From Zygnema circumcarinatum SAG 698-1b (taxonomy: Eukaryota > Plantae > Zygnematophyceae), in contig CM074821.1 in assembly GCA_037447605.1 (NCBI GenBank), positions 372,001 through 436,000 on the forward strand: a stretch of DNA of 64,000 nucleotides. Reading direction: 5' to 3'. Of the stretch, positions 51,803 through 64,000 are shown piece after piece. The notes under the pieces are model-generated. The model made no database searches. It saw only the letters and a program-made list of their open reading frames with translations, and was not told where the DNA came from. A program made the position numbers and the translations under genes. The first letter of the stretch is position 1. Each line of letters starts with the position of its first letter.

Positions 51803-52050
51803 AGACTTGACTGAACTTGACCAGACTGGACTCAGACTCAAATTGACTTTATCGACTCAGCTTGTCTTGACTCAACTTGACTTCACTAGACTTGACTTAG
51901 ACTTCAAACTGACTTTATTGACTCGGCTTGGCTCGCACTTCAAAAAGACTTTATTGACTCGACTTGTCTTGACTCAACCTGACTTGACCAGACTTGACTC
52001 AGACTCAAATTGACTTTATTGACTCGACTTGTTCTTGACCGAACTTGGCT
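51803..52050. repeat. GACTT/GACTC-based minisatellite with higher-order repeats
   Basis: Directly visible; the block ttgactttattgactcg recurs. Confidence 0.8.
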
Positions 52051-52300
52051 TGGCACGAGAATTAGCTAACTTTCGCGAACCACGAGCAGCAGGGCCCTCC
52101 CTCCAGGCCTTCCCTCCCTCCAGGCCTTCCCTCCCTCCCTCCCTCCCTCCCTCCCTCTCCACAAATTAGGTCACTGCTGGTCAATGGCTGCCTCGCGGGA
52201 GGCTCGCTCTTGGAGGGCAGCAGAGCAGGTCCCCCTCTTGCGATGGCGCCCTCGTCCTCGGCAGACAGGAAGGGGCGGAAGGAAAAAGGCTCCATCATCA

Positions 52301-55300
52301 CTAGGGGGCGCAGGTTGAGAGCTTTGGGATGCATATGTTGCTGCCCAGGCTGACGAGCTTCTTGAGAGAAACGGGTTTGCATGCGAATCCGTTCAGCTTT
52401 TTGAAGGTTTCTTTCTTGGTGAAGCATTTCTTCAGACTCGCGCACGTGTCTGTAGTGAGGACCTTGTAGGCCTTCCCCGTGCACTTTCCTGCGGCTCCCG
52501 CGTCGTCAGCTCGGAGGCACACCTGGGAGAGGCAGCAAGCTGCATCAGCATGCTGAACTGAACGCCTTTCTTTCTTGGGGATGCAGAAAGTAATGATGCG
52601 TTACAAGATGCGACATACATATCACACAAACACATACACATAGACATGTACGCATCTGGATAAGCATTCATGTCACACCTACACACACATACATAGCACA
52701 TATCACACATATACACCGTACATATCACATGACGCTATCAATGACACCTCGATGGGCAAACGATTCTTCTCAACATGCAGGAAAACACACCAGACGAGTA
52801 TGGAACACCCTGGCGATGGGAGAAGGAGAGGGCGAGACTTATGAGCAACTGTCAAAACGTGACGTGACATGCACCAGAACCATCAAGTAAAGCATAGACG
52901 CTTATTTCTTAGATCTTTAAGGTCGTTTTCGCAAAAAAAGAATTGGGGAGAAGCTGGGTAATGCCTCCTCACCTCCTGCCCGAAATTTTTGTTTTCATTC
53001 CCTCCCATGAGCAGGCGGCCGCAGTACACTCCGGGGTTCAAGTAGTAAAACTCTCTCACGTCTCCATCCATGTAAGTGTCGATGATGTCGGAGCACGACT
53101 CATTGGCGGGCACTAAATACTGCCACGTGCAGGGTCCCGGGTAGGCAAGGGGGCCGCGCTCAATGCACACCTGTAAAGGATCATAAGAAGGAAAGGAGAG
53201 CAGCTTCTTAAAACGGACCCTTATCAATATATCCTGGAAACTCTACAGTCGAATGAAGGGGTTTGACGGAGTGGTCAATACGTGAGCTGTCTCCATGAGC
53301 AAGGACATCATTGAATAAGATGCACATAAAAAGTTGTATCTCAATGCTGTCCAATTCCTGTGGAGAGACTGGAGAGAAACTTCAGAAACTGGAGAGAGTG
53401 AACACCCCATGTATTCAACCAGGACGTCGAAATAAATCGAATTTTGAAGATGCAAGTTTGTCTTGATGAGCGACTAATTGTGAGTCTAATTAGCTAATTG
53501 CGAGTGCAGGGTGCCCCCCCGCACCTGCTGAAATGGCTGCAGAGCGGAGCAGTCGAGGTCAGGGTTGGGCGAGTCGCGGCCGGCGAGCGACGAAATGTTG
53601 AACTTCTCCGCAATGGACGAGCAGCTGTCACCCTGAAGGGGAATAAGGACAGAAGTGTGAGGGGGGAGAGAGAGACAGGAGGGAGAGGAGAAGAGGGTCA
53701 GGAGGGAGGGAGGGAGGGAGGGAGGGAGCAGCTGTCATGATAGCAAAGGAACTGCAGCAAAATTGCTGGGTGTAGGCAAAGTCGAACCTCATTCACGGCA
53801 TACAGGACGGTGCAGTTGCTGAAATTCGTGACATTGACCAGCTGTCCAGCGGGCAGCACATTGCTGCAGTCAAGGCCCTGCAATCCCACGCTTTGTGTTC
53901 ACTAACTTTGGCAAGGAAACGAGACAGATAAACGGCACGAGGCTGCAGCCAATCATCACGCTCTCTCTCTCTTTCTCACTCTCTGTCTCTCTCCCTCTCT
54001 CTCCCTCGACTGTGCAGTAGGGACCAGTGGACCAGTGATGTAACCCTGAAAAGGAATTACCATGTTTTGTGCGAAAAAGGCAGTTTTGTCGACACCGTAA
54101 GTTTTCTGAACCAAATCGCATGTGACATTGAAGCCGGTTGGAACTGCAAAGTATTGAAGGTCCGAACTTGGGATGCCAACTGCACAAATTGATCAAAAAG
54201 GCTTTCTGATGAGCTCTCATGGGACGTAGATTCAGAAAGGTATTCAACACTGGCATGAAAGAATCTCAAAACAAAAAATCAAACATGACGCAGATCAAGA
54301 AAAATGACGACCTGATAGAAGTTACTTTACAAACAATGGGGTTATTGTTATTATAATGTTTCTACACGGTGAGAGTGTGAGCCTCTCTAATACACAGCCC
54401 TGCACATTCCCTGCCCCCTGCATTGAGTGCTGCAAATGGATGACGGCAGTGATGTCTCTCCATTGCCTATCCTCTAGACATCTCTCTCTTCTCTCTTCTC
54501 TCTCTCTTCTCTCTTCTCTCTTCTCTTCTCTCTCTTCTCTCTTCTCCCTTTTCTCTCTCTCTCTCTCTCGCTCTCTCTCTCATGAGCAGGCCGAGCCAAA
54601 AAGGGTGAAAGCGGAGCACCTGGAATGCAGGTGATGACACCTTCGCTGACGTCATCGCGATACCCCATTGGGCACACGCAGGAGTACGTGCCCGGAGCCG
54701 CCACGGAGTCAAGACACGTGCCGACACCGCAGGGGTTGCTCGTTGTGAATGTGCACGGAGAGGCTGCAGACCCGCCCCCTCTACCATATGTATGTGAACA
54801 ATTTTATGTAATATATGTACATAATGTCATGTATGTATGTAATAGTCAGCACAAGATGAGCCAGCAGGAGCCTCTCAGAAAACATCACTACTGCACCTCT
54901 CAATGCCTGTGTACTCCAGTTCCCACTCCCATTCCTACTCCTATTCCTACTCCAGTTCCTACTGCCACTCCTATTCCTACACCCACTCACTCCCACCACT
55001 TTCATTCATTTCCACTCCCACTACCACTTCCCCTTTCAAGTTTCCATGGGCTTTCAGTTGGACCCACGGCGGACACAAACGTGAGCAAGCTTGCTTGCTT
55101 GGGGATTTAATAAGACAGGAACCATATAGAAACGAGGTCACACTTTGACCAGTACCCATAGTAACTTGAAGCCGGCTCCATGGCCTGCCAGCTCTCTTCT
55201 TGATGCTAATTCTGGAAAGGTTTCAAGGCGTGAAGGTTTGTATGGCGAGGAGGCACCTGGAGAGCATGTTTGCGTGGAGTTGCTGTTGTTGACCGCCACA

Positions 55301-58300
55301 AAGCCTGTTTTGCAAATGCAGACATTGCCAGATCCGCTTGGTTTGCATTTGCCGCCCCCGCAAGGGTTCATGCGGCCGAGAGAAGAATCGGAATCCAAAA
55401 TCTTCTGGGAATAGCTGTTCGTGTTGCAGGGGTCGTCAGCTGCCACCCCAGTTTGAAGTGAACACTTCATAAGATAAGACAGGCGTAACTAGTTGAACAC
55501 CATCGAGGTCTGAAGGCTACATCGTCTGAATCGTAATTCGCAGCAATATGGTGAATTCGCACGTGTGAGTGAACTGATTGAACATTTAAAGCAATTACAA
55601 AAAACTTCAAATGCTCAACTGGAAAAGCTCGCAAGCCTCTGCATTTCATGTTCAATTCAATATCATTAGTTTGAGACAACAATTACTGCCCGAAAACGTG
55701 TTCAAATGTCCAAAAAAAGGTTAGCATTTCAGTACTGTACATGGTGGTTGCACGATCGGTATGAGGGCCGGCAGACTGTTTATGCCGCAAATGCCCCCTC
55801 CCCCCGTCATCTTTAAGCGCATGTACCCGCGCTCCCCCCACGTGTCGCCCCACGAGTTGCGGACGACCCAATGAGGGGGGTCGTAGGTGAGGTCGTAGCC
55901 GACCACCACCACCGTGTGGTCAACGCCGGCGGAGAAACACTCCTCGTCGTCCATGATGCCCTGCACACCGCCATGGATCGCTGACCTCAAATGCTGGGCA
56001 GCAAATGGTTTATGTAACAAGAGAGCTTTGGCCCCTCTGCCCTAACTCTCTCAGATGTGATGCTCCTGCTGGAGGCGGGTTTGCAACAGTTTAGGTACAG
56101 GGCCGGGACTTGGAAAGTCAATCCATGGCATTCGTACAATGTTTGAGTGTAGATAGAACGTATTCACTGACAATCCCATCCAAGGTACTCATAGCTCATA
56201 TTTGAGCGGGCGACACATGTTCCACACAGTTCCCCAAATGATGTGTGGCATAGCTACATTATTTTGACAATAATGTCATTTTTTCATGAAGCAACAGAAA
56301 AAGGAGGTCAAATGACAAAAGGCCACGAGAGCTTACACTCTTATAGTTGATGAAAGCGTTGCTGCTGCCTTCTACATTGACAATGGCGGGTTGTTGCTGA
56401 AGGGCCAGCAAGAGACCCATCCATCCGTTGAATTGAACTTGTTCAAAGGAGGTGATTTTAAAGACATTACTCCCCTGCAAAAAGAAGGCCTATGATGAAT
56501 GGCAGCTTTGTGCAAGCATAATAGTTGTCATACATTCTTAAGAGGCATACAGAAGAAGGAAATGCCATTGCGAAGAGTGAGCAGTGATCATGTGCGTTGA
56601 ACAAAGCCTTAGATATGCTTGAAGACTCAAATCGTTGAAGTCCTGGAACACAACCATTTCAAATAGAGTATGCCATTAATAGTAGGACCAAAGGTGTAGT
56701 TCAGGACTTCAAAATGCTTACTGTGCCAGAGGGGCAGCTGTCAGGGCCAACATAGGGGGTGATGAGACCATTGGTTGCAGCAAAATCAAGAGTTTCAGTT
56801 GGCCAGCCTGTGGAGTCGCATGTCTTGTTCTGACCACCGCAATCCAAAACCTGCGTTTCTGCGAAGCTCGGCTGCTGATCACCTCCACTTGTAATGTAAA
56901 ACGCGCTCTCAATTGCAGCGACTGGTCCAAATATCCAACACGAACCTGCAATGTGTACATTTTCCCCAGTCAACACACATACCGAAACCCCAAATTCTAT
57001 CTACAACTGATGTATAACCAAATCGCAAGGGGAGTGGGCCTACTGCACGAGTCTTGGTCCTTTATGCCCTGCACCGCTCCCCTCTTCGCCCAGTTCCAAT
57101 CGGCCGCCACCAGCCACGTGGCGGAGGCCTCCCCGGAGGGGACCACATACCCCGAACTCGCGTATCGGAAATAAGAGCTCAGGAAGGGAGAGTCGTTGGG
57201 CTGCTCCGGGGAGAGGCCGAGACCAAAGTTTGCTGCACGGGCCAAGGAGGAGGGCTGGTTTCTTTTACTATAGACGCTTTTGTGCTATCGGACGGGAGGA
57301 AAGAATGAGGAAGGGGCCTTTCCTAAGGCGAACACATGCTTATCAACCTCTGCAGATATTGGACCAGCTGAACTTCTTGATCCAAATTAAGACGTAGTTT
57401 CGCAGCAGTCTCAGTCATCGTCATTGGTAAAACAATTTGATGGAAAGAAAGTAAAGACCAGATATCCTACGAAATACTAAGACGACCAACAAGCATATAC
57501 AGTTGACAACACGTAGCTTCCCGCAGATTGGCAGGAACCTATCACTTATGCCATGGTTGCTAGTATTTTATACAATAACGTTAGCAGTAAACCGGATGTT
57601 GCGAATGAACTCGAGAGAACTTTCAATTAGTGGAACTTTCATTCAAGCAAAGCAATCCTGCCTAGCACAAGCATTATGGAGACTGCACAAGCAATACAGA
57701 ATGTAATGTAGTAGACGTTACCCAGAGGCAACGGATATTATTCTTCACACAACGTGCAGGCTCGTCTATGAGAGAAGAGAACCTACAAAAGATGCAAGTT
57801 GTATTGACGTCCACGTTGGTGTACCCTCTGTCGCATACACATGTTGGAGAGCTCTGATTGTAACACGAGCCATGGCCGCCGCAAGCACCCAAAGGCTGCG
57901 TCGCATTGCAGAAGAACAGGCACGCCGAGGTGTCTCTCTGAGAGTCTTGGGTGCATGGGAAGGAACTGTTGAAAAAGTCAAAGCAGTTCGTCGTCAGATA
58001 GTAGCAGGTCTCGTCGGTGATGGGTATCTGACTGCCATTCTGAACGATGAAGGGCGTGCCGGAGAAATAGTTGTCGGAGATGTCAATTTCCGGGTCAGTG
58101 ATAGTAGTGTTGAACTCCAAAACCACGGGGCCAATTAGCAGGTTGCTGCTCACTTTGCTGCCACAAACACCAAGCCTTGCATGTTCAATATAAGCCTCCC
58201 CAACTGCGTGAACAGCACTGCTGAAGCTGCGAAAGGGAACGAGTAATACGATTCTATACCAACAAATGTGGAGTACGTAAACCGCATACATGCAGCAATG

Positions 58301-61300
58301 TAGCTGGCTAAGTATTCAAACGAGCATCGCTACTTAGAAAGAATTTAAAAGACAAATTCTGAGAGTGCAATCAACGGTCTCTGCATTAAGAAAATTTAAT
58401 GACCTCGTGGTCACTTATGGATGATAATGAAAAGTGTATCTATCCTTTGTCAAGCGATTGGAAAAATGAATGTACTTATATATCAAGCTGCCACTGCTGC
58501 ATCACTGCCATATTGCTAATCATGCCATTGCCACGTCGTTTTTTTGATAACTATCGTGCGCAAGTAAAGGGAAAGGTGATGAGGAATTACAAGTCAGTGA
58601 GAGAAGGGAGGCCGTCCAAGTCTGGAGGTATGTTACCCGTCAACTGATTCGAGTGCAGAAATCTGCATCCAACAAAGCAAATTTAACGAAGGTTTCTAGC
58701 TTCAATATTCCTGGCATATAGACCTGTTGCTTAGCAATACGACTTTTGGTTATCTTAAGGCTTTGTGGTGCGAACGCAATAGCTGCTGCGTTGTAGCTCA
58801 CATTTTTCGCAGAACTCTTAGATTTCCAAAGATCGGAGGGATGCTGCGGGTGAGCATATTCCCATTCAGATGCCTGCAAGAAAAGAACTTAACATGCGTT
58901 AATCCACAGAATATTAAAGTTGCAATCAACTTTTCTCCAACTTTCCCGACGCTCCCAAATCTTGCAATTTTCCTCCTTTCAAATGCTACAACCTCTTAAT
59001 TCGACCTTTCAACCAATCCTGAATGTTCTGGTTACCTCGGCGTATAATTCTTCGGAAGTTAAAGGGTATTAAGCAACACCCTTACGACTTCTGCATGCCT
59101 AAGGACGAATTCGGCACATTGTCGCCAGCATTCATTTTACATTTTGCATTTTTTTCATTTCTTTTCTGTGAATGGAGGCTGACTCAAGGCAAATGGAAGC
59201 CGATGGAAGAAGATTTAGGAAGTTGTCTATAATTCATATGTGAGGCTGAGTGTCGTGGCGTACAGTTCTTCAAGAAGCGTAAGGGCTTTGAAGGATGCTG
59301 GAATTTCTCCACTCAGCACGTTGTCTGATAGTTTCCTGCCTCACACAGTTTCACCCAATGATACTTTTGAGCATTGGGTCTGCCCCATCAATCCCGCCAA
59401 GATGACACCAAGTCTATAACTTCACAAGAGGTGGCCACTTCAAAGCAAAAAGCGTTGCAAGATCATGATGAAGGGCCTTACAAGATTTTGAGGTTGCGAA
59501 GATTGCCGATTGAATCTGGGATGTTGCCAGACAACCGATTGGAGCCAAAATCCCTAACATACAGTTCAACAAAAGACAAGTTAGTTGCAACATTCGATCG
59601 CAAAGCGATGGAGCTATTATGATCAATGCCTTTATTTGCATCGTTATGTAATGTTTGAGCTTATGGTAGAGAGAAATTAGAACCTTCCAAGTGAGGTGAC
59701 TCACAGCTCTTCCAATGTCAACAAGTTGCCGATGGCCGACGATATTGAGCCACCTAACGACCAACCGCTCAAGTCGCTGTTCTCCATGACATGCACAACA
59801 CAGAATCATGTCACAACCTTATCTTGCTGCTGCCAAAATTCTAGATAAAAAGAGAATTAAAAAAATGCCAAATGGAGGTAGTCATGGAGCGGCATCAATA
59901 ATCAACGGCGACTGTCCAATGCATGCAAAATCCTTCCCCCAATTTTCGGGGATTGTGCAGCATCTGGAAGGAAGCAGAGGGCATGACATGCTGCAGGGGG
60001 AATCCCTACATGCTTCCGTCAACCTACATGTAGCAAGTAAGAGTGTACTCTCCAATCCAAAGTTGACCAGCAAATGCAAAACGACACGGACATGAAGTCG
60101 ACGAGACTAAGCGTTTGTCAATGAAGAAGGTCACACGTGGGCAATGTGCTGCTAGATCAATCTGTCTTTTGAGACATTCGAATGGCTCCCAAAAAAGCAG
60201 ACAAGTAGTCCCCCTCTATGAAGATGGCCAATGGAAATGATATCAATGAATCCTGAATCCTTTCCTGTACTGTCACCTCCAAGTTTAGACTCGATCATTT
60301 CAAATGAGGCGAGGGGCAAAAAGTTACAGCTTTACGACTTGATTGCTGTCCGAACAATATACGCCATTCCAAAAACAAATTGCCCGAGTTGTACGCCAGT
60401 TTGCCAAGAGTAGGCGAGGGTCAACGATTTCTTTTTTGATCTGCAAGAGCCAAAAGTCTAAGCACACAAAAAACCGAATAACATGGTTCAATCATTAGAG
60501 GCCTATAATATCAGAGAAATGCCTGAAATAGACCAACGTACTAGTTGTCTAGCCCATGAAATCTCTTTCCAAATTAATTCAAAGAATGTCATATGCTTTT
60601 ATGATAAAGAGATAGATTAGGTCAGTCTCCATGATATTGTAGAAGGTAAATAGGTGCATGCCTGCGAATTATAAAAGTTGATCCGTTGCCTTCAGCTACA
60701 ACTATTAACAATATGTTCTAGTTTGCAGAATGGATAACCCGAGAAAGAGCAAGATTCTCAACAACTGTATGATACAGTATGACATCCTCATGCAGAGTTG
60801 CCCAAGAAATGCATACGTCAAAACTTCAAAATTGAAAACGACTCAATTGACATAAAATCAAATGAATGTGGGTAAGGATGGAATTGAACACGGAGGAAGG
60901 GAAAGTTTCACCCATATGAAGCTATAAGGGCGAAAGGGGGGTTCACAAGCATGCCATGTGAAATTAGTTTACTGCACCTGAAGTAGGAGGTGGCGGGGCT
61001 ATCGGTGGAGGGGGAAAGCTTGGAGGCAGACAAGGTTCGCCTGACGTTGATTGAGGTGAAGGTGAGGGTGAAGGTGAAGGAGAATCCATGCAAGGGTAAG
61101 GCGTGAGTGGCCCGTAGGGTGGACTAGGGGGAGATGGTAGCGGTAATAATCCAGTCGGGGCTGGGGCTGGGGCTGAGACTGGAGGTGGGGCTAATGATGG
61201 TGGCAATGGCAATGGTGGCGGTTGCAATGTAGGAGGATATGGTGGTGGTTGGGGCGGTGATGGTGAAGGACTCGGAGGAGGTGATCGTGGAGGAGGCGAT

Positions 61301-64000
61301 GGTGGGGAAAGTGGTGGTGGCCTTACCGGTGGTTTTGGTGGTGGAGGGCTTGGTAGTGGTGATCCCAGAGGCTTTGGAGGAGGCGATGGTGGAGGCAATG
61401 GAGGAGGTGAAGGTGGGGAAAGTGGTGGTGGTTTTGCCGGTGGCTTTGGTGGTGGAGGGCTTGGTGGCGGTGGGCTAGGAGGGCTTGGAGGAGGTGATGG
61501 TGGAGGCAATGGAGGAGGTGAAGGTGGGGAAAGGGGTGGTGGCTTTACCGGTGGCTTTTGTGGTGATGATCTTGGAGGCCTTGGAGGAGGCGATGGTGGA
61601 GAGTTTGGAGGAGGTGAAGGTGGGGAAAGTGGCGGTGGTTTTATCGGTGGCTTTGGTGGTGGAGGGCTTGGTGGTGGTGATCTCGGAGGCCTTGGAGGAG
61701 GTGATGGTGGAGGGTTTGGAGGAGGAGAAGGTGGGGAAAGTGGTGGTGGTTTTGCCGGTGGCTTCGGTGGTGGAGGGCTTGGTGGCGGTGGGCTAGGTGG
61801 GCTTGCAGGAGGTGCAGGCGCTGCTTAACATTCCACAGCAATGACTGTTAGTTTTGTGTACTCAATAAGCCGTCATATGCACACGTGGGATTCTTTCATG
61901 CGATTCAACTCTACACTGAACATCGGATTCACCAATGAAACTTGATTCGAGACGAAAAGGTACGAAAGGAGTCAGTTGTCCCAACAGAGTTCGACAGTTT
62001 TAGTTGCCTGCTAACAATATACAGGGAGGGAGGGAGGGAGGGAGGGAGGGAGGGAGGGGAGGAGGGAGGGAGGCAGGGAGGGATTGCATCTGTTAGATCT
62101 AGGAATCAGTCCAGTCGAATGTTAAATCTAGGAAGTTCACGCTCGTCTCGCTGTTGCTTTGACGCTATGCGCCCTAGACTGGGTGAAAATTCGGACTCTG
62201 CACCATTAACTTGAATGCAGATTGGGAAGCCACGTGAAGACTCCACAACTTACTTGTTTGGGCCCTATTTCCACTTCATGCAACATTTTTATGCTAAATT
62301 CATGCCCCTACCTCAAGGGGGAAGGCAAAAACTAACAGATGTGATTCAAGGTGCCGGATCCAACCCGTTCCTTTACATGACTCTTGAACATTACGCAGCG
62401 CACATGGAGTTCGTAGAAAGGATTGCAACCAAAAACCAGGTGAAGCCTCACCAGGTGAACAAGTCCAGGGTTGATTTGATATGATGAACCCTTGGTCACA
62501 TACACATGTCGCAACACCACTCGAAGTATTGCAAGCACCATGACCACCGCATGCGCCGCCTAGCTGCTTTGCATTGCAAAAGTTTTGACATTCAACGTCA
62601 ATCCTTTGCCTTGATAACGAACATCCGACAATGCTTCCAAAAAAACAGTTCATTCGAACCAAAGGACAAAAAGTTTTATAATCGAGAGTGACGTCAACAG
62701 GGCTTGAGATGTAGTTTGCCGACATGTTGAGTGTGAGTGTGGAGTTGAAACCAAAATAGTCAGAATAGAATTTTAACGTCACTGATCCCGAGAGAAAGTT
62801 ATCATTCAGCATCCTGCAATCAGAAACGACATAAGCGATAAATAGTCTGTAATCCCAGCTGAAATGGGGAAACGGCACATAAAGCTGCCAGTAGAACACA
62901 ATTTAAAATTGAAAAAATAGAGACGGAAATAGACACGGAAAAAAAAATAGAACGTAGACGACGACTACTGATATTGATATTGCGTTTATTCAAATAAGTG
63001 AGTTCATACATGAAGATGCAGATGGCTTAGTAGCAGAAAACCATCGCACGTGACTTCACGATTAAACTATGAGTAGCCATTGTAGCCTTACAGACCACCA
63101 TTCATTATGTAGTTCTATCTCACAGACTGCACGGCTCGTATCCTGCCACTTGTCTCAGACTGCTTCACCACATACACTACAAAAGTATTGATACAATGCG
63201 TTGTTCAACTGAGAACCACAAAGAATTTGCTCACACACGCTTCAGTGACTACGCCAAATCAATGTAACTTGACTATGATAAGATGGATCAGAATTCATTG
63301 CCGGAAAATGAACTTAAGGCCATTAGCAATCAGTACCAATAAGTCGTTGAATTTTGTGAGAAGGAGACTTACACGTATGCGAGACGAGGCAGGTTGCCAA
63401 TGCAGGTAGGAATGCTGCCCGTGAGGTTGTTCTTCCCCAAGTCTCTGCCAGGAAGCCGATACAAAGAATCTTAACGAGCTAATTTTAAAATTCTTTTACA
63501 ACTAGAAAAGGGTAAAGACAAGGAAGAAGTAAGCCTAGAGCACAGAAAAAAGAAAGCTTTGCAAGTACACGTGGTAAGGGAACGTGACGTTGTATCAAAA
63601 TTATGGTTCGCAAAGGAGTCGTTTTCAGCTTTACTTTAGTTCAGAGACCAAAAGATGGTAAAGATGGGTTTCAAGCTCACAATCGGGAAAGGAGAGAAAG
63701 GCTGCAAATGGACTGTGGAATTGTTCCCGTCAACGCATTTCCTCGAAGCTCTCTGCAAATCGATTTATGGCACACGGTATCTGGTCATTCAGACGGCCGT
63801 CTCTACATTTGGTTCATTTAACGTTACATTAATCGGAACAAATCATTCCGACTCGGATTTCATATGTTTGAAACGAAGGAAATTATTACAGGCGATCAGC
63901 CGCCTTCATAGGTCATGATTCCAAAACACGGGAAAAACGAAAGTATTGTGAGGGCAGGAAAGACTAAAAGTTGATGAAGACTTACAGAGCCAAAAGGTTG
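52301..64000 (-). CDS. Large mosaic extracellular protein, 5'-partial: LRR-EGF-extensin-LRRNT-LRR-EGF-papain(C1A)-EGF-EGF-LysM x~4
   Basis: One phase-consistent GT-AG chain: 63752-63681, 63444-63373, 62813-62452, 61820-60978, 60764-60739 (inferred micro-exon), 60440-60328, 59776-59705, 59553-59482, 59335-59264, 58873-58802, 58662-58591, 58157-57787, 57232-57044, 56945-56722, 56474-56337, 55960-55741, 55439-55257, 54763-54620, 54179-54061, 53877-53788, 53632-53525, 53170-52973 and 52522-52301. Motifs: L..N.L.G.IP..IGNL, KDQDSCSSCW, VDH, RNSWG, EGF cysteine patterns, and Y.V..(G)DSC..I..F...NP.L.C. Confidence 0.85.

What the first reader, a model, noticed from the sequence alone, without database searches (positions are those of the whole stretch)
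52301..64000. Giant LRR-extensin-papain-EGF-LysM mosaic: a candidate wall-anchored pattern-recognition protease
Seen: one continuous splice-phase chain of at least 23 exons (>1350 aa, 5' end outside the window). It joins plant-type LRRs, an SP3/SP4-rich hydroxyproline-type rod of about 280 aa, a second LRR block, a papain domain with intact Gln/Cys/His/Asn (KDQ..C..CW, DH, RNSWG), four EGF-like modules and about four LysM repeats. No transmembrane or kinase domain precedes the stop codon. Established: LysM binds GlcNAc polymers (chitin, peptidoglycan), extensin domains anchor LRX proteins in the wall, and papain-like proteases are apoplastic immunity hubs. I know of no described protein combining all of these. 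Inference: a secreted sensor-effector that docks on microbial walls or wall glycans and cleaves a target, or that remodels the wall during division or conjugation.
Basis: partly seen in the sequence, partly recalled or inferred. Interest (0 to 1): 0.88.

Follow-up and report, generated by a model that had tools for sequence, protein, structure and literature searches.

The report
Mosaic LRR-extensin-papain-LysM algal protease gene
This is a real, expressed gene of a green alga close to land plants: sugar- and ligand-binding modules and a proline-rich rod are joined to an intact papain-type protease, it belongs to a family so far known only as unnamed predicted proteins, and its function is untested.

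Summary
On the minus strand I get 22 exons, all GT..AG, encoding 1347 aa that are open at the window's 5' edge and end at TAG 52303-52301. The order is LRR, LRRCT/EGF-like, a 281-aa SP-rich rod, LRRNT_2 with six LRRs, LRRCT/EGF-like, papain C1A with Gln/Cys/His/Asn intact and no I29 prodomain, two EGF-like modules and four LysM repeats. There is no TM segment and no kinase.

RNA contigs from three runs of two studies splice the rod exon straight to the LRRNT exon (60978 to 60457, in frame). The doubtful junction therefore holds, but the 26-nt micro-exon does not. The junction 62452 to 61820 and exons 18-22 are inferred; homology supports exons 18-22.

The novelty claim is overstated:
- The C-terminal 898 aa align end to end with stand-alone proteins of Mesotaenium. 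About 69 relatives occur in Mesotaenium and Closterium, all unnamed.
- C1A+LysM(+EGF) mosaics were already catalogued in Chlamydomonas.
- This scan already noted paralogous loci in the same genome.

New here is an LRX-like head joined by a splice 11 nt before the rod's stop codon, across an intron that holds a signal-peptide-like ORF. That suggests a fusion of two neighbouring genes. The defence or wall-remodelling role remains inference.

The parts
63681..63752 (-). Exon 1 in window: one 24-aa plant-type LRR (72 nt, phase 2). The gene continues upstream of 64000.
   Evidence: AG/GT sites and LRR consensus; weak LRR_ComC hit. No RNA test.
63373..63444 (-). Exon 2: one 24-aa LRR (72 nt)
   Evidence: LRR_1 E=0.06. 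No RNA test.
62452..62813 (-). Exon 3: last LRR, LRR C-terminal cap and EGF-like module 1. It ends in phase 1 at donor 62452.
   Evidence: EGF_2 17 bits, below cut-off. 36% identical to exon 11. 0.95-0.97 of its sampled words are held in contigs of 7 runs. Junction sequence.
60978..61820 (-). Exon 4: SP-rich hydroxyproline-type rod (281 aa, 111-nt tandem unit x4.9). The donor at 60978 lies 11 nt before the in-frame stop TAA 60966-60964.
   Evidence: RNA contigs cover 60978 to about 61645 and splice to 60457.
60710..60791 (-). Signal-peptide-like ORF inside intron 4 (MRMSYCIIQLLRILLFLGLSILQTRTY), followed by a phase-1 GT. It may be a relic or alternative first exon of the downstream unit.
   Evidence: Sequence. 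Zero RNA depth in 4 runs. Homologues start with signal peptide plus LRRNT. Inference.
60328..60457 (-). Exon 5: LRRNT_2 cap of the second LRR block
   Evidence: Pfam LRRNT_2 3.4e-8; RNA joints on both sides.
58591..59776 (-). Exons 6-10: five 72-nt LRR exons (59776-59705, 59553-59482, 59335-59264, 58873-58802, 58662-58591)
   Evidence: RNA joints; translation.
57787..58157 (-). Exon 11: last LRR, LRR C-terminal cap and EGF-like module 2
   Evidence: RNA joints; EGF_2 19.6 bits; homologues only in Mesotaenium, Closterium and unnamed Logan contigs.
55741..57232 (-). Exons 12-15: conserved ~45-aa pre-segment and papain C1A domain (57232-57044, 56945-56722, 56474-56337, 55960-55741). Codons: Gln 57056-57054, Cys 56940-56938, His 55918-55916, Asn 55858-55856. 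No I29 prodomain.
   Evidence: Pfam; PDB alignments to ficin and actinidin; RNA joints; coordinates; pre-segment.
55257..55439 (-). Exon 16: EGF-like module 3
   Evidence: RNA joint; EGF 14.8 bits, below cut-off, six Cys.
54620..54763 (-). Exon 17: EGF module 4
   Evidence: Pfam EGF 25 bits, above cut-off. The 30-nt loose end of RNA contigs maps to 54734-54763. Donor inferred.
52301..54179 (-). Exons 18-22: four LysM repeats and the stop codon (54179-54061, 53877-53788, 53632-53525, 53170-52973, 52522-52301; TAG 52303-52301)
   Evidence: Splice sites inferred. Aligns to the C-terminus of P0035. Family LysM HMM finds 4 repeats. AF2 plus Foldseek for repeat 4. Pfam LysM 21.3 bits for repeat 2.

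Best explanation
The locus is one expressed gene, whose start lies outside the window, for a large extracellular mosaic protein of a zygnematophyte-type alga.

Core. The C-terminal 898 aa run LRRNT, six LRRs, LRRCT/EGF, C1A papain, two EGF and four LysM. This is a member of a family that in Mesotaenium and Closterium exists as stand-alone secreted proteins.

Head. Here the core has no first exon of its own in the mRNA. It is reached by a splice from the last exon of an upstream LRR-EGF-extensin (LRX-like) unit. The donor sits 11 nt before that unit's stop codon, so the head and a ~281-aa proline-rich rod are fused in frame to the core.

Inferred working:
- The protein is secreted.
- The glycosylated rod acts as a stiff spacer in or on the wall.
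- The four Cys-bridged LysM repeats hold the C-terminus on a GlcNAc-containing polymer (chitin, peptidoglycan or a related glycan).
- The LRR blocks bind a protein or peptide partner, as an exosite or address.
- The prodomain-less but catalytically complete papain domain cuts nearby proteins.

The output is therefore proteolysis at a recognised surface, not kinase signalling. Defence against chitin- or peptidoglycan-walled microbes is the role I think most likely.

Shown: the exon chain for exons 4-17, the domains, the catalytic residues and family membership. Inferred: secretion, ligand, substrate, biological role and the fusion history.
For: RNA. Three assemblies (X1, X3, X4; two studies) carry the joint 60978->60457 with 106-130 nt on the shorter side. 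X1 record 1 (2510 nt, depth 103) is colinear with exons 4-17. The frame is continuous.

Core homology. blastp of residues 450-1347 against Mesotaenium P0035 (901 aa) aligns q30-891 with s55-895 at 36% identity, E=1e-146. P0004 gives 1e-134. Both carry LRRNT/LRR + Peptidase_C1 + EGF + LysM by Pfam and start with a signal peptide followed by LRRNT.

Family. 69 Mesotaenium and Closterium proteins. The window's papain domain falls in the group with the LysM-annotated, lectin-free members, apart from the Closterium lectin clade.

Active site. Intact.

LysM x4..

No TM segment..

Fusion signs. The stop codon lies 11 nt past the donor, and a signal-peptide-like ORF with a phase-matched GT lies in the intron.

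LRR type. The LRRs of the family resemble plant receptor ectodomains such as FLS2, GSO1, PEPR1 and PGIP.
Against: - The 5' end, and so the signal peptide, is not in the window.
- Assembled contigs show presence, not proportions. A stand-alone transcript from the intronic ORF, or a short LRR-EGF-extensin mRNA ending at TAA 60966, cannot be excluded.
- There is no prodomain, so folding and latency are unexplained.
- 11 of 35 family papain domains, including P0035, have Ser at the nucleophile position. Catalysis is therefore not universal in the family.
- Pfam itself recognises only one LysM, at 21.3 bits against a cut-off of 20.9.
- No expression, binding or activity data bear on the role.
Confidence: 0.7

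Rival explanations
1. There are two genes. One is an LRX-like LRR-EGF-extensin gene ending at TAA 60966-60964. The other is a separate LRR-EGF-papain-EGF-LysM gene with its own promoter and signal-peptide exon (ATG 60791). On this reading the spliced junction seen in RNA is a minor read-through chimera.
For: - Homologues of the core are stand-alone, with signal peptide plus LRRNT.
- The stop lies 11 nt after the donor, and intron 4 holds a signal-peptide-like ORF with a phase-1 GT.
- An LRRNT_2 cap normally sits at a mature N-terminus.
- In run X2 no contig carries the 60457/60978 joint.
Against: - In X1 the fused contig has the same depth (103) over exon 4 and the core exons.
- X3 and X4 carry the same joint.
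- Depth between 60601 and 60800 is zero in all four runs, so the proposed own first exon is not seen.
- The scan reports RNA-joined fusions at a paralogous locus (unchecked by me).
Confidence: 0.15
2. The gene structure is the same, but the role is in the alga's own wall and matrix: remodelling during growth, division or conjugation, or processing of matrix proteins or peptide signals. The LysM and LRR modules would then bind endogenous glycans and proteins rather than microbes.
For: - The head resembles LRX-type wall proteins, and the rod resembles volvocine HRGP spacers.
- A Volvox C1A protease is induced by the sex pheromone (PMC2474614).
- No microbial ligand has been shown.
Against: - The LysM domains solved so far bind GlcNAc polymers. 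Every top structural match is a chitin- or peptidoglycan-binding LysM.
- Zygnematophyte walls are not known to contain such polymers (my own knowledge).
- The large, architecture-swapping expansion in Closterium looks more like a recognition repertoire.
Confidence: 0.25
3. The protein is mainly an adhesin or lectin, and the papain fold serves as a binding or scaffold module rather than as an enzyme.
For: - There is no I29 prodomain, which C1A enzymes normally need for folding and latency.
- 11 of 35 family members have Ser in place of the catalytic Cys.
Against: - In this gene Gln, Cys, His and Asn, and the flanking motifs CW, DH and NSWG, are all kept.
- His159 (34 of 35) and Asn175 (35 of 35) are kept across the family, and Cys is the majority residue at position 25.
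Confidence: 0.1

Closest known systems
Zygnematophyte LRR-C1A-EGF-LysM predicted proteins, e.g. Mesotaenium endlicherianum ME000065S09001 (P0035, 901 aa) and ME000166S01720 (P0004, 1139 aa), and Closterium 'unnamed protein product' entries
   Same: Same order of LRRNT/LRR, LRRCT-EGF, conserved pre-segment, Peptidase_C1 without I29, EGF and 3-4 Cys-containing LysM repeats. The alignment runs end to end at 36% identity.
   Different: They begin with their own signal peptide. The window's core is instead preceded in the mRNA by an LRR-EGF head and a 281-aa SP-rich rod. P0035 has Ser at the nucleophile position, while the window has Cys. None has been studied experimentally, as far as the paper library shows.
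Chlorophyte C1A-LysM mosaics: the Chlamydomonas architectures catalogued by Van Holle & Van Damme 2019 (PMC6362431, Suppl. Table 3), and the Volvox pheromone- and wound-induced protease (Amon et al. 1998, cited in PMC2474614)
   Same: A papain C1A domain combined with 2-3 LysM repeats, in some cases with EGF-like and other lectin modules. The proteins are extracellular algal mosaics. From my memory only: the Volvox enzymes carry an extensin-like spacer.
   Different: No LRR blocks are listed in the C1A rows shown, and the partner domains differ (SRCR, galactose-binding, C-type lectin). No sequence relative from chlorophytes appeared in my searches. Independent assembly of similar parts is therefore possible.
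Land-plant LRX (LRR-extensin) proteins
   Same: The order is an N-terminal plant-type LRR, then a Cys-rich segment, then an SPn rod. An LRX2 structure is among the PDB matches of the family's LRR.
   Different: The Cys-rich part is EGF-like. The rod lacks YXY cross-link motifs. The protein does not end with the rod but continues into a protease-LysM unit. RALF binding was not tested.
Plant papain-like cysteine proteases (papain, ficin, actinidin, RD21/Rcr3 type)
   Same: C1A fold and catalytic Gln/Cys/His/Asn. The best solved matches are ficin and actinidin.
   Different: There is no I29 prodomain and no granulin tail. The domain is embedded between EGF modules in a >1347-aa mosaic.
LysM proteins: the Volvox, Pteris and Equisetum chitinase LysMs, fungal Ecp6, and plant CEBiP/LYK ectodomains
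   Same: The beta-alpha-alpha-beta fold is predicted for repeat 4, and the top Foldseek matches are these LysM domains (TM by target 0.64-0.69).
   Different: Each repeat carries about four Cys (GD[ST]C ... LDC ... QVC ... C). Sequence similarity to Pfam LysM is marginal. There is no TM segment, kinase or GPI signal.

Membership tests
Peptidase C1A (papain family) | Match to the Peptidase_C1 profile above the curated cut-off | tested here: met
   41.8 and 62.1 bits against a cut-off of 20.7, on two exons.
Peptidase C1A (papain family) | Catalytic Cys25/His159 dyad with Gln19 and Asn175 | tested here: met
   SCW aligns to ficin residues 24-26. DH and NSW align to the actinidin His and Asn.
Peptidase C1A (papain family) | N-terminal I29-type inhibitory prodomain | tested here: not met
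   There is no Pfam hit on the exon before the mature domain, and none in P0035 or P0004. Only about 45 aa lie between EGF2 and the mature start.
Peptidase C1A (papain family) | Proteolytic activity sensitive to E-64 | not testable with these tools
   This needs recombinant protein.
LysM domain proteins | Match to Pfam LysM at the gathering score | tested here: inconclusive
   One partial hit at 21.3 bits against 20.9, for repeat 2. There was no hit at E<=1 for the pieces that hold the N-terminal half of repeat 1, repeat 3 and repeat 4. Introns split repeats 1 and 2.
LysM domain proteins | Repeats homologous to validated LysM, with a beta-alpha-alpha-beta fold | tested here: met
   A family HMM seeded on Pfam-validated LysMs finds 4 repeats. 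The AF2 model of repeat 4 (pLDDT 70) has E-H-H-(H)-E, and its top matches are all LysM.
LysM domain proteins | Binding of GlcNAc-containing glycans | not testable with these tools
   A pull-down is needed.
Extensins / LRX proteins | Repeated Ser-Pro3-5 motifs | tested here: met
   17 SPPP and 6 SPPPP motifs, and 58% Pro over 281 aa.
Extensins / LRX proteins | Tyr cross-linking motifs (YXY / VYK) | tested here: not met
   0 YXY motifs and 3 Tyr in 281 aa.
Extensins / LRX proteins | LRX layout: signal peptide, LRR, Cys-rich hinge, and a C-terminal extensin that ends the protein | tested here: not met
   The order LRR, Cys-rich, rod is present. However, the mRNA splices on into the protease unit. 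The signal peptide lies outside the window.
Zygnematophyte LRR-C1A-EGF-LysM family (unnamed) | End-to-end colinear similarity with the same domain order | tested here: met
   E=1e-146 to P0035 over 862 of 898 residues. Pfam architectures are, and the tree placement.
Plant LRR receptor kinases / receptor-like proteins | Transmembrane helix, with or without a kinase, after the ectodomain | tested here: not met
   There is no hydrophobic stretch (maximum KD19 1.38) and no kinase hit. The stop follows LysM4.

The most novel reading that the evidence does not exclude
The locus may be one instance of a combinatorial head-swap system in the closest algal relatives of land plants. On this reading a conserved effector cassette (LRR-EGF-papain-EGF-LysM x4) is repeatedly captured by upstream genes. 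The capture works through a splice donor placed just before the stop codon of a proline-rich last exon. This would yield a repertoire of extracellular proteases addressed by different recognition heads: LRR-EGF here, and NIDO or PAN/FTP at paralogous loci according to unchecked scan notes. It would be a receptor-free, protease-output form of surface immunity or cell recognition.
Probability: 0.2. Interest if true: 0.8.

Novelty: new variant of a known kind. Interest (0 to 1): 0.55.

Why it matters
Zygnematophytes are the sister lineage of land plants, so their extracellular recognition machinery bears on how plant surface immunity and wall sensing arose. This family puts plant-type LRR ectodomains and LysM modules, the two main pattern-recognition folds of land plants, on a protease instead of a kinase. 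It has expanded to dozens of copies, and no paper in the searched library describes it. The locus also gives a clean, RNA-supported example of how such mosaics are built: a splice that bypasses one gene's stop codon and the next gene's signal-peptide exon. If the protein does act on chitin- or peptidoglycan-walled microbes, it would be an unexplored type of algal defence enzyme.

Tried and rejected
1. Two-gene reading. It was my first guess, because an LRRNT_2 cap follows the rod and a stop follows the donor. I downgraded it after the RNA joint 60978->60457 appeared in three runs.

2. Rejected, because depth there is zero and the joint is direct.

3. RNA-level proof of junction 62452->61820. 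Read laying allows one call, so I searched the protein database with the 200-aa piece of exon 3 to find transcript-derived ORFs. Nothing was found. A run search shows only that exon 3 is present in contigs of 7 runs.

4. The window's own protein in the 1.84-billion representative library. It is absent. The best hits are 39-45% identical. The longest hits (P0010, P0029, and probably P0001, which I did not scan) are unrelated repeat proteins.

5. 'LysM replaced by legume lectin' in Closterium members. Rejected. A family HMM finds LysM repeats in nearly all of them, and Lectin_legB sits between the LRR and the papain domain.

6. ESM Atlas. It holds no cluster of 50 or more members with C1+LysM.

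7. Genomic neighbourhood of Closterium P0038, to look for an upstream head gene. The gene spans 32 kb and no neighbour lies within 10 kb, so this was uninformative.

8. Rfam on 52000-64000. No hits.

9. The Amon et al. 1998 paper is not held in the library. Its details on chitin-binding repeats and the extensin spacer in the Volvox protease rest on my memory.

Full report
**What is in the sequence**

The region is eukaryotic, and its coding pieces lie on the minus strand. Reading the three minus-strand frames gave stop-free pieces with these hits:
- Peptidase_C1: 1.7e-10 and 1.1e-16.
- LRRNT_2: 3.4e-8.
- EGF or EGF_2: one hit above Pfam's cut-off and three below.
- LysM: one partial hit at 21.3 bits.
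- Single LRRs: weak hits.

I built a model from splice sites and RNA. It has 22 exons, and all 21 introns are GT..AG. It encodes 1347 aa, open at the 5' window edge and ending at TAG 52303-52301.

The order of modules is:
- two LRR exons;
- an exon with the last LRR, the LRR C-terminal cap and EGF-like module 1;
- one 843-nt exon for a 281-aa rod (58% Pro, 17 SPPP, 6 SPPPP, built from a 111-nt tandem unit);
- an LRRNT_2 exon;
- five 72-nt LRR exons;
- a second LRR-cap/EGF-like exon, 36% identical to the first;
- four papain exons;
- two EGF exons;
- five exons carrying four LysM repeats.

No 19-residue stretch is hydrophobic enough for a membrane helix (maximum 1.38), and no kinase is found.

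**RNA evidence**

Five runs labelled with the same organism hold 34-41% of the sampled words of 54000-61000, which is about the exon share. I laid the contigs of four of them on 55201-61200. This gave 12 canonical spliced joints that define exons 4-16. A loose end maps to 54734-54763, the start of exon 17.

One contig, X1 record 1 (2510 nt, depth 103), is colinear with the whole stretch. The 490 nt between its pieces equal exactly 130 + 5 x 72 nt.

It runs from 60978 to 60457 with 106-130 nt on the shorter side. It is GT..AG and keeps the frame (...PPPPTS-D-FWLLQIKKEIVDP...). Depth between 60601 and 60800 is zero in all four runs.

**What RNA did not test**

Only one read-laying run is allowed, so three things remain untested: the junction 62452->61820, the linkage of exons 1-3 to the rest, and exons 18-22.

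For the junction, the sequence evidence is as follows:
- The sites are canonical, and both sides are in phase 1.
- The rod exon has no ATG before its last 40 codons, so it cannot open a coding sequence.
- Exon 3 is present almost completely in contigs of seven runs, including X1.

A protein-database search for transcript-derived ORFs spanning this junction found nothing.

For exons 18-22, the support comes from homology, described next.

**Relatives**

A search of 1.84 billion representative proteins with exon 11 returned only 32 hits, and none was the protein itself. One hit, P0004 from Mesotaenium endlicherianum (1139 aa), has LRRNT_2, LRRs, Peptidase_C1, EGF and LysM.

Searching with P0004 returned 69 proteins from Mesotaenium and several Closterium strains, plus two anonymous contig ORFs. 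All are unnamed or hypothetical. By the precomputed Pfam lists, 37 have LRRs, 24 have LysM and 11 have both. Many Closterium members also carry a legume-lectin domain, which sits between the LRR and the papain domain.

Residues 450-1347 of my model align end to end with Mesotaenium P0035 (901 aa). The alignment covers q30-891 against s55-895 at 36% identity, E=1e-146. This validates the inferred 3' exons and the stop codon.

An HMM seeded on three Pfam-validated LysM segments and iterated within the family finds four repeats in the model (3e-12, 7e-13, 2e-11, 1.5e-4). It finds 2-7 repeats in nearly every family member. I modelled the weakest repeat, which lies wholly in exon 22, with AlphaFold2 on a 21-row alignment. 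The model has pLDDT 70 and the pattern strand-helix-helix-(helix)-strand. Its top ~30 Foldseek matches in the PDB are LysM domains, among them Ecp6, fern and Volvox chitinase LysMs and LYR4. The E-values are weak, as expected for a 50-residue fold.

**The protease**

The exon with SCW aligns to residues 24-26 of ficins. The last papain exon aligns DH and NSW to the His and Asn of actinidin. Gln sits six residues before the Cys. All four catalytic residues are therefore present (coordinates).

There is no I29 prodomain here or in P0035 or P0004. Instead, a conserved ~45-aa segment (..YLNxxFRHxSxGF..NW..VDW) links EGF2 to the mature domain.

Among 35 family papain domains, His is kept in 34 and Asn in 35. 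The nucleophile is Cys in 23 and Ser in 11, including P0035. In a tree, the window's domain sits on a long branch in the group with the LysM-annotated, lectin-free members. It lies apart from the Closterium lectin clade (100/100 support), and its best identity is 45%, to P0004.

**Signs of a gene fusion**

Homologues of the core begin with a signal peptide that runs directly into the LRRNT cap. In the window, the LRRNT exon is instead reached from the rod exon.

Two features point to a fusion. First, the donor of the rod exon lies 11 nt before an in-frame TAA (...TSGAVN*). Second, the 520-nt intron contains an ORF, MRMSYCIIQLLRILLFLGLSILQTRTY. This ORF looks like a signal peptide and is followed by a GT in exactly the phase of the acceptor at 60457.

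The simplest reading is that an LRX-like gene and a stand-alone core gene lay in tandem and became one transcription unit. Under that reading the old first exon is now skipped or used rarely. This is inference. Contigs show presence rather than absence, so a minor stand-alone transcript is not excluded.

**How it probably works**

Shown: an expressed mRNA encoding a protein with no membrane anchor, with plant receptor-type LRRs (the family LRR matches FLS2, GSO1, PEPR1, MIK2 and PGIP ectodomains), an intact C1A site and four LysM repeats.

Inferred:
- The protein is secreted. The signal peptide is outside the window.
- The rod is hydroxylated and glycosylated and acts as a long spacer. It lacks YXY motifs and has only three Tyr, so covalent extensin-type cross-linking is not indicated.
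- The LysM tail tethers the protein to a GlcNAc polymer.
- The LRR blocks select a partner or substrate.
- The papain domain cuts proteins at that surface.

I put about 0.4 on defence against chitin- or peptidoglycan-walled organisms and about 0.25 on remodelling or signalling in the alga's own matrix. The rest goes to other or non-catalytic roles.

**Comparison with what is known**

The combination of C1A with LysM is not new. Van Holle and Van Damme (PMC6362431) state that C1A peptidase domains occur with LysM in non-vascular lineages. Their Supplementary Table 3 lists Chlamydomonas architectures such as 'Peptidase C1A/LysM (3x)', and a mosaic with LysM, SRCR, EGF-like, fucolectin, C1A and galactose-binding domains.

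A Volvox C1A protease outside the cathepsin groups is induced by the sex pheromone (PMC2474614, citing Amon et al. 1998). The LysM of a Volvox chitinase has been solved (PDB 5k2l, seen). That the Volvox protease also carries chitin-binding repeats and an extensin-like spacer is my recollection, because the paper is not held.

I found no paper on LRR-papain-LysM proteins or on this family in zygnematophytes.

The scan itself has already noted paralogous loci in this genome with the same core behind other heads (s1-343947, s1-321692, s1-378308). It has also noted an LRR-EGF-extensin reading that overlaps the window's upstream edge (s1-358293). I did not check those notes beyond what this window shows. 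A note on a PYL homologue in the same window, together with the best hits in Mesotaenium and Closterium, suggests a zygnematophyte. The organism is coded in the tools, and I did not identify it.

**Verdict**

The locus is a new variant of a family that exists in databases but is undescribed: an LRX-like head and rod spliced onto the core. It is of moderate interest, mainly for the evolution of plant surface recognition and as a clear case of gene fusion by splicing.

Noticed in passing
window 60710-60791 (minus strand), inside intron 4: A signal-peptide-like ORF (MRMSYCIIQLLRILLFLGLSILQTRTY) is followed by a GT in the same phase as the acceptor at 60457. It may be a relic or alternative first exon. 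No RNA depth was seen there in four runs.
   Followed up: partly
window 55553-55587 and 55687-55714 (intron 15): Abundant contigs (depth 75-119 in X2-X4) share only these two short blocks with the window. The blocks are joined by a non-canonical skip (AA..AC), and the contigs run on into unlike sequence on both sides. Rfam finds nothing. This is probably a short dispersed repeat, but it is unexplained.
   Followed up: partly
window 57810-58157 and 56831-56902: Runs X2 and X4 hold second contigs of exons 11 and 13 with 6-9 base differences from the window. These are an allele or a very close paralogue that is also expressed.
   Followed up: no
family proteins P0035 and others: 11 of 35 papain domains of the family have Ser at the catalytic Cys25 position while keeping His and Asn. 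This recalls silicateins and suggests either non-proteolytic or Ser-nucleophile members.
   Followed up: partly
window 57044-57190 (exon 12), P0035, P0004, P0038: A conserved ~45-aa segment (..YLNxxFRHxSxGF..NW..VDW) lies between EGF2 and the mature papain domain, in place of an I29 prodomain. It could be a short latency or folding element.
   Followed up: no
window about 53690-53740, 62010-62120 and 52065-52170: (CCCT)n-type microsatellites lie in an intron of this gene and just beyond its ends. In some frames they read as GGREGGRE or LPPSLPPS.
   Followed up: no
L001 (Closterium sp. Naga37s-1, CANJKZ010000139.1:537152-589483): The homologous Closterium gene for P0038 is annotated over 32 kb for 1195 aa, so it has very long introns or an over-extended model. 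No other gene was called within 10 kb on either side.
   Followed up: no
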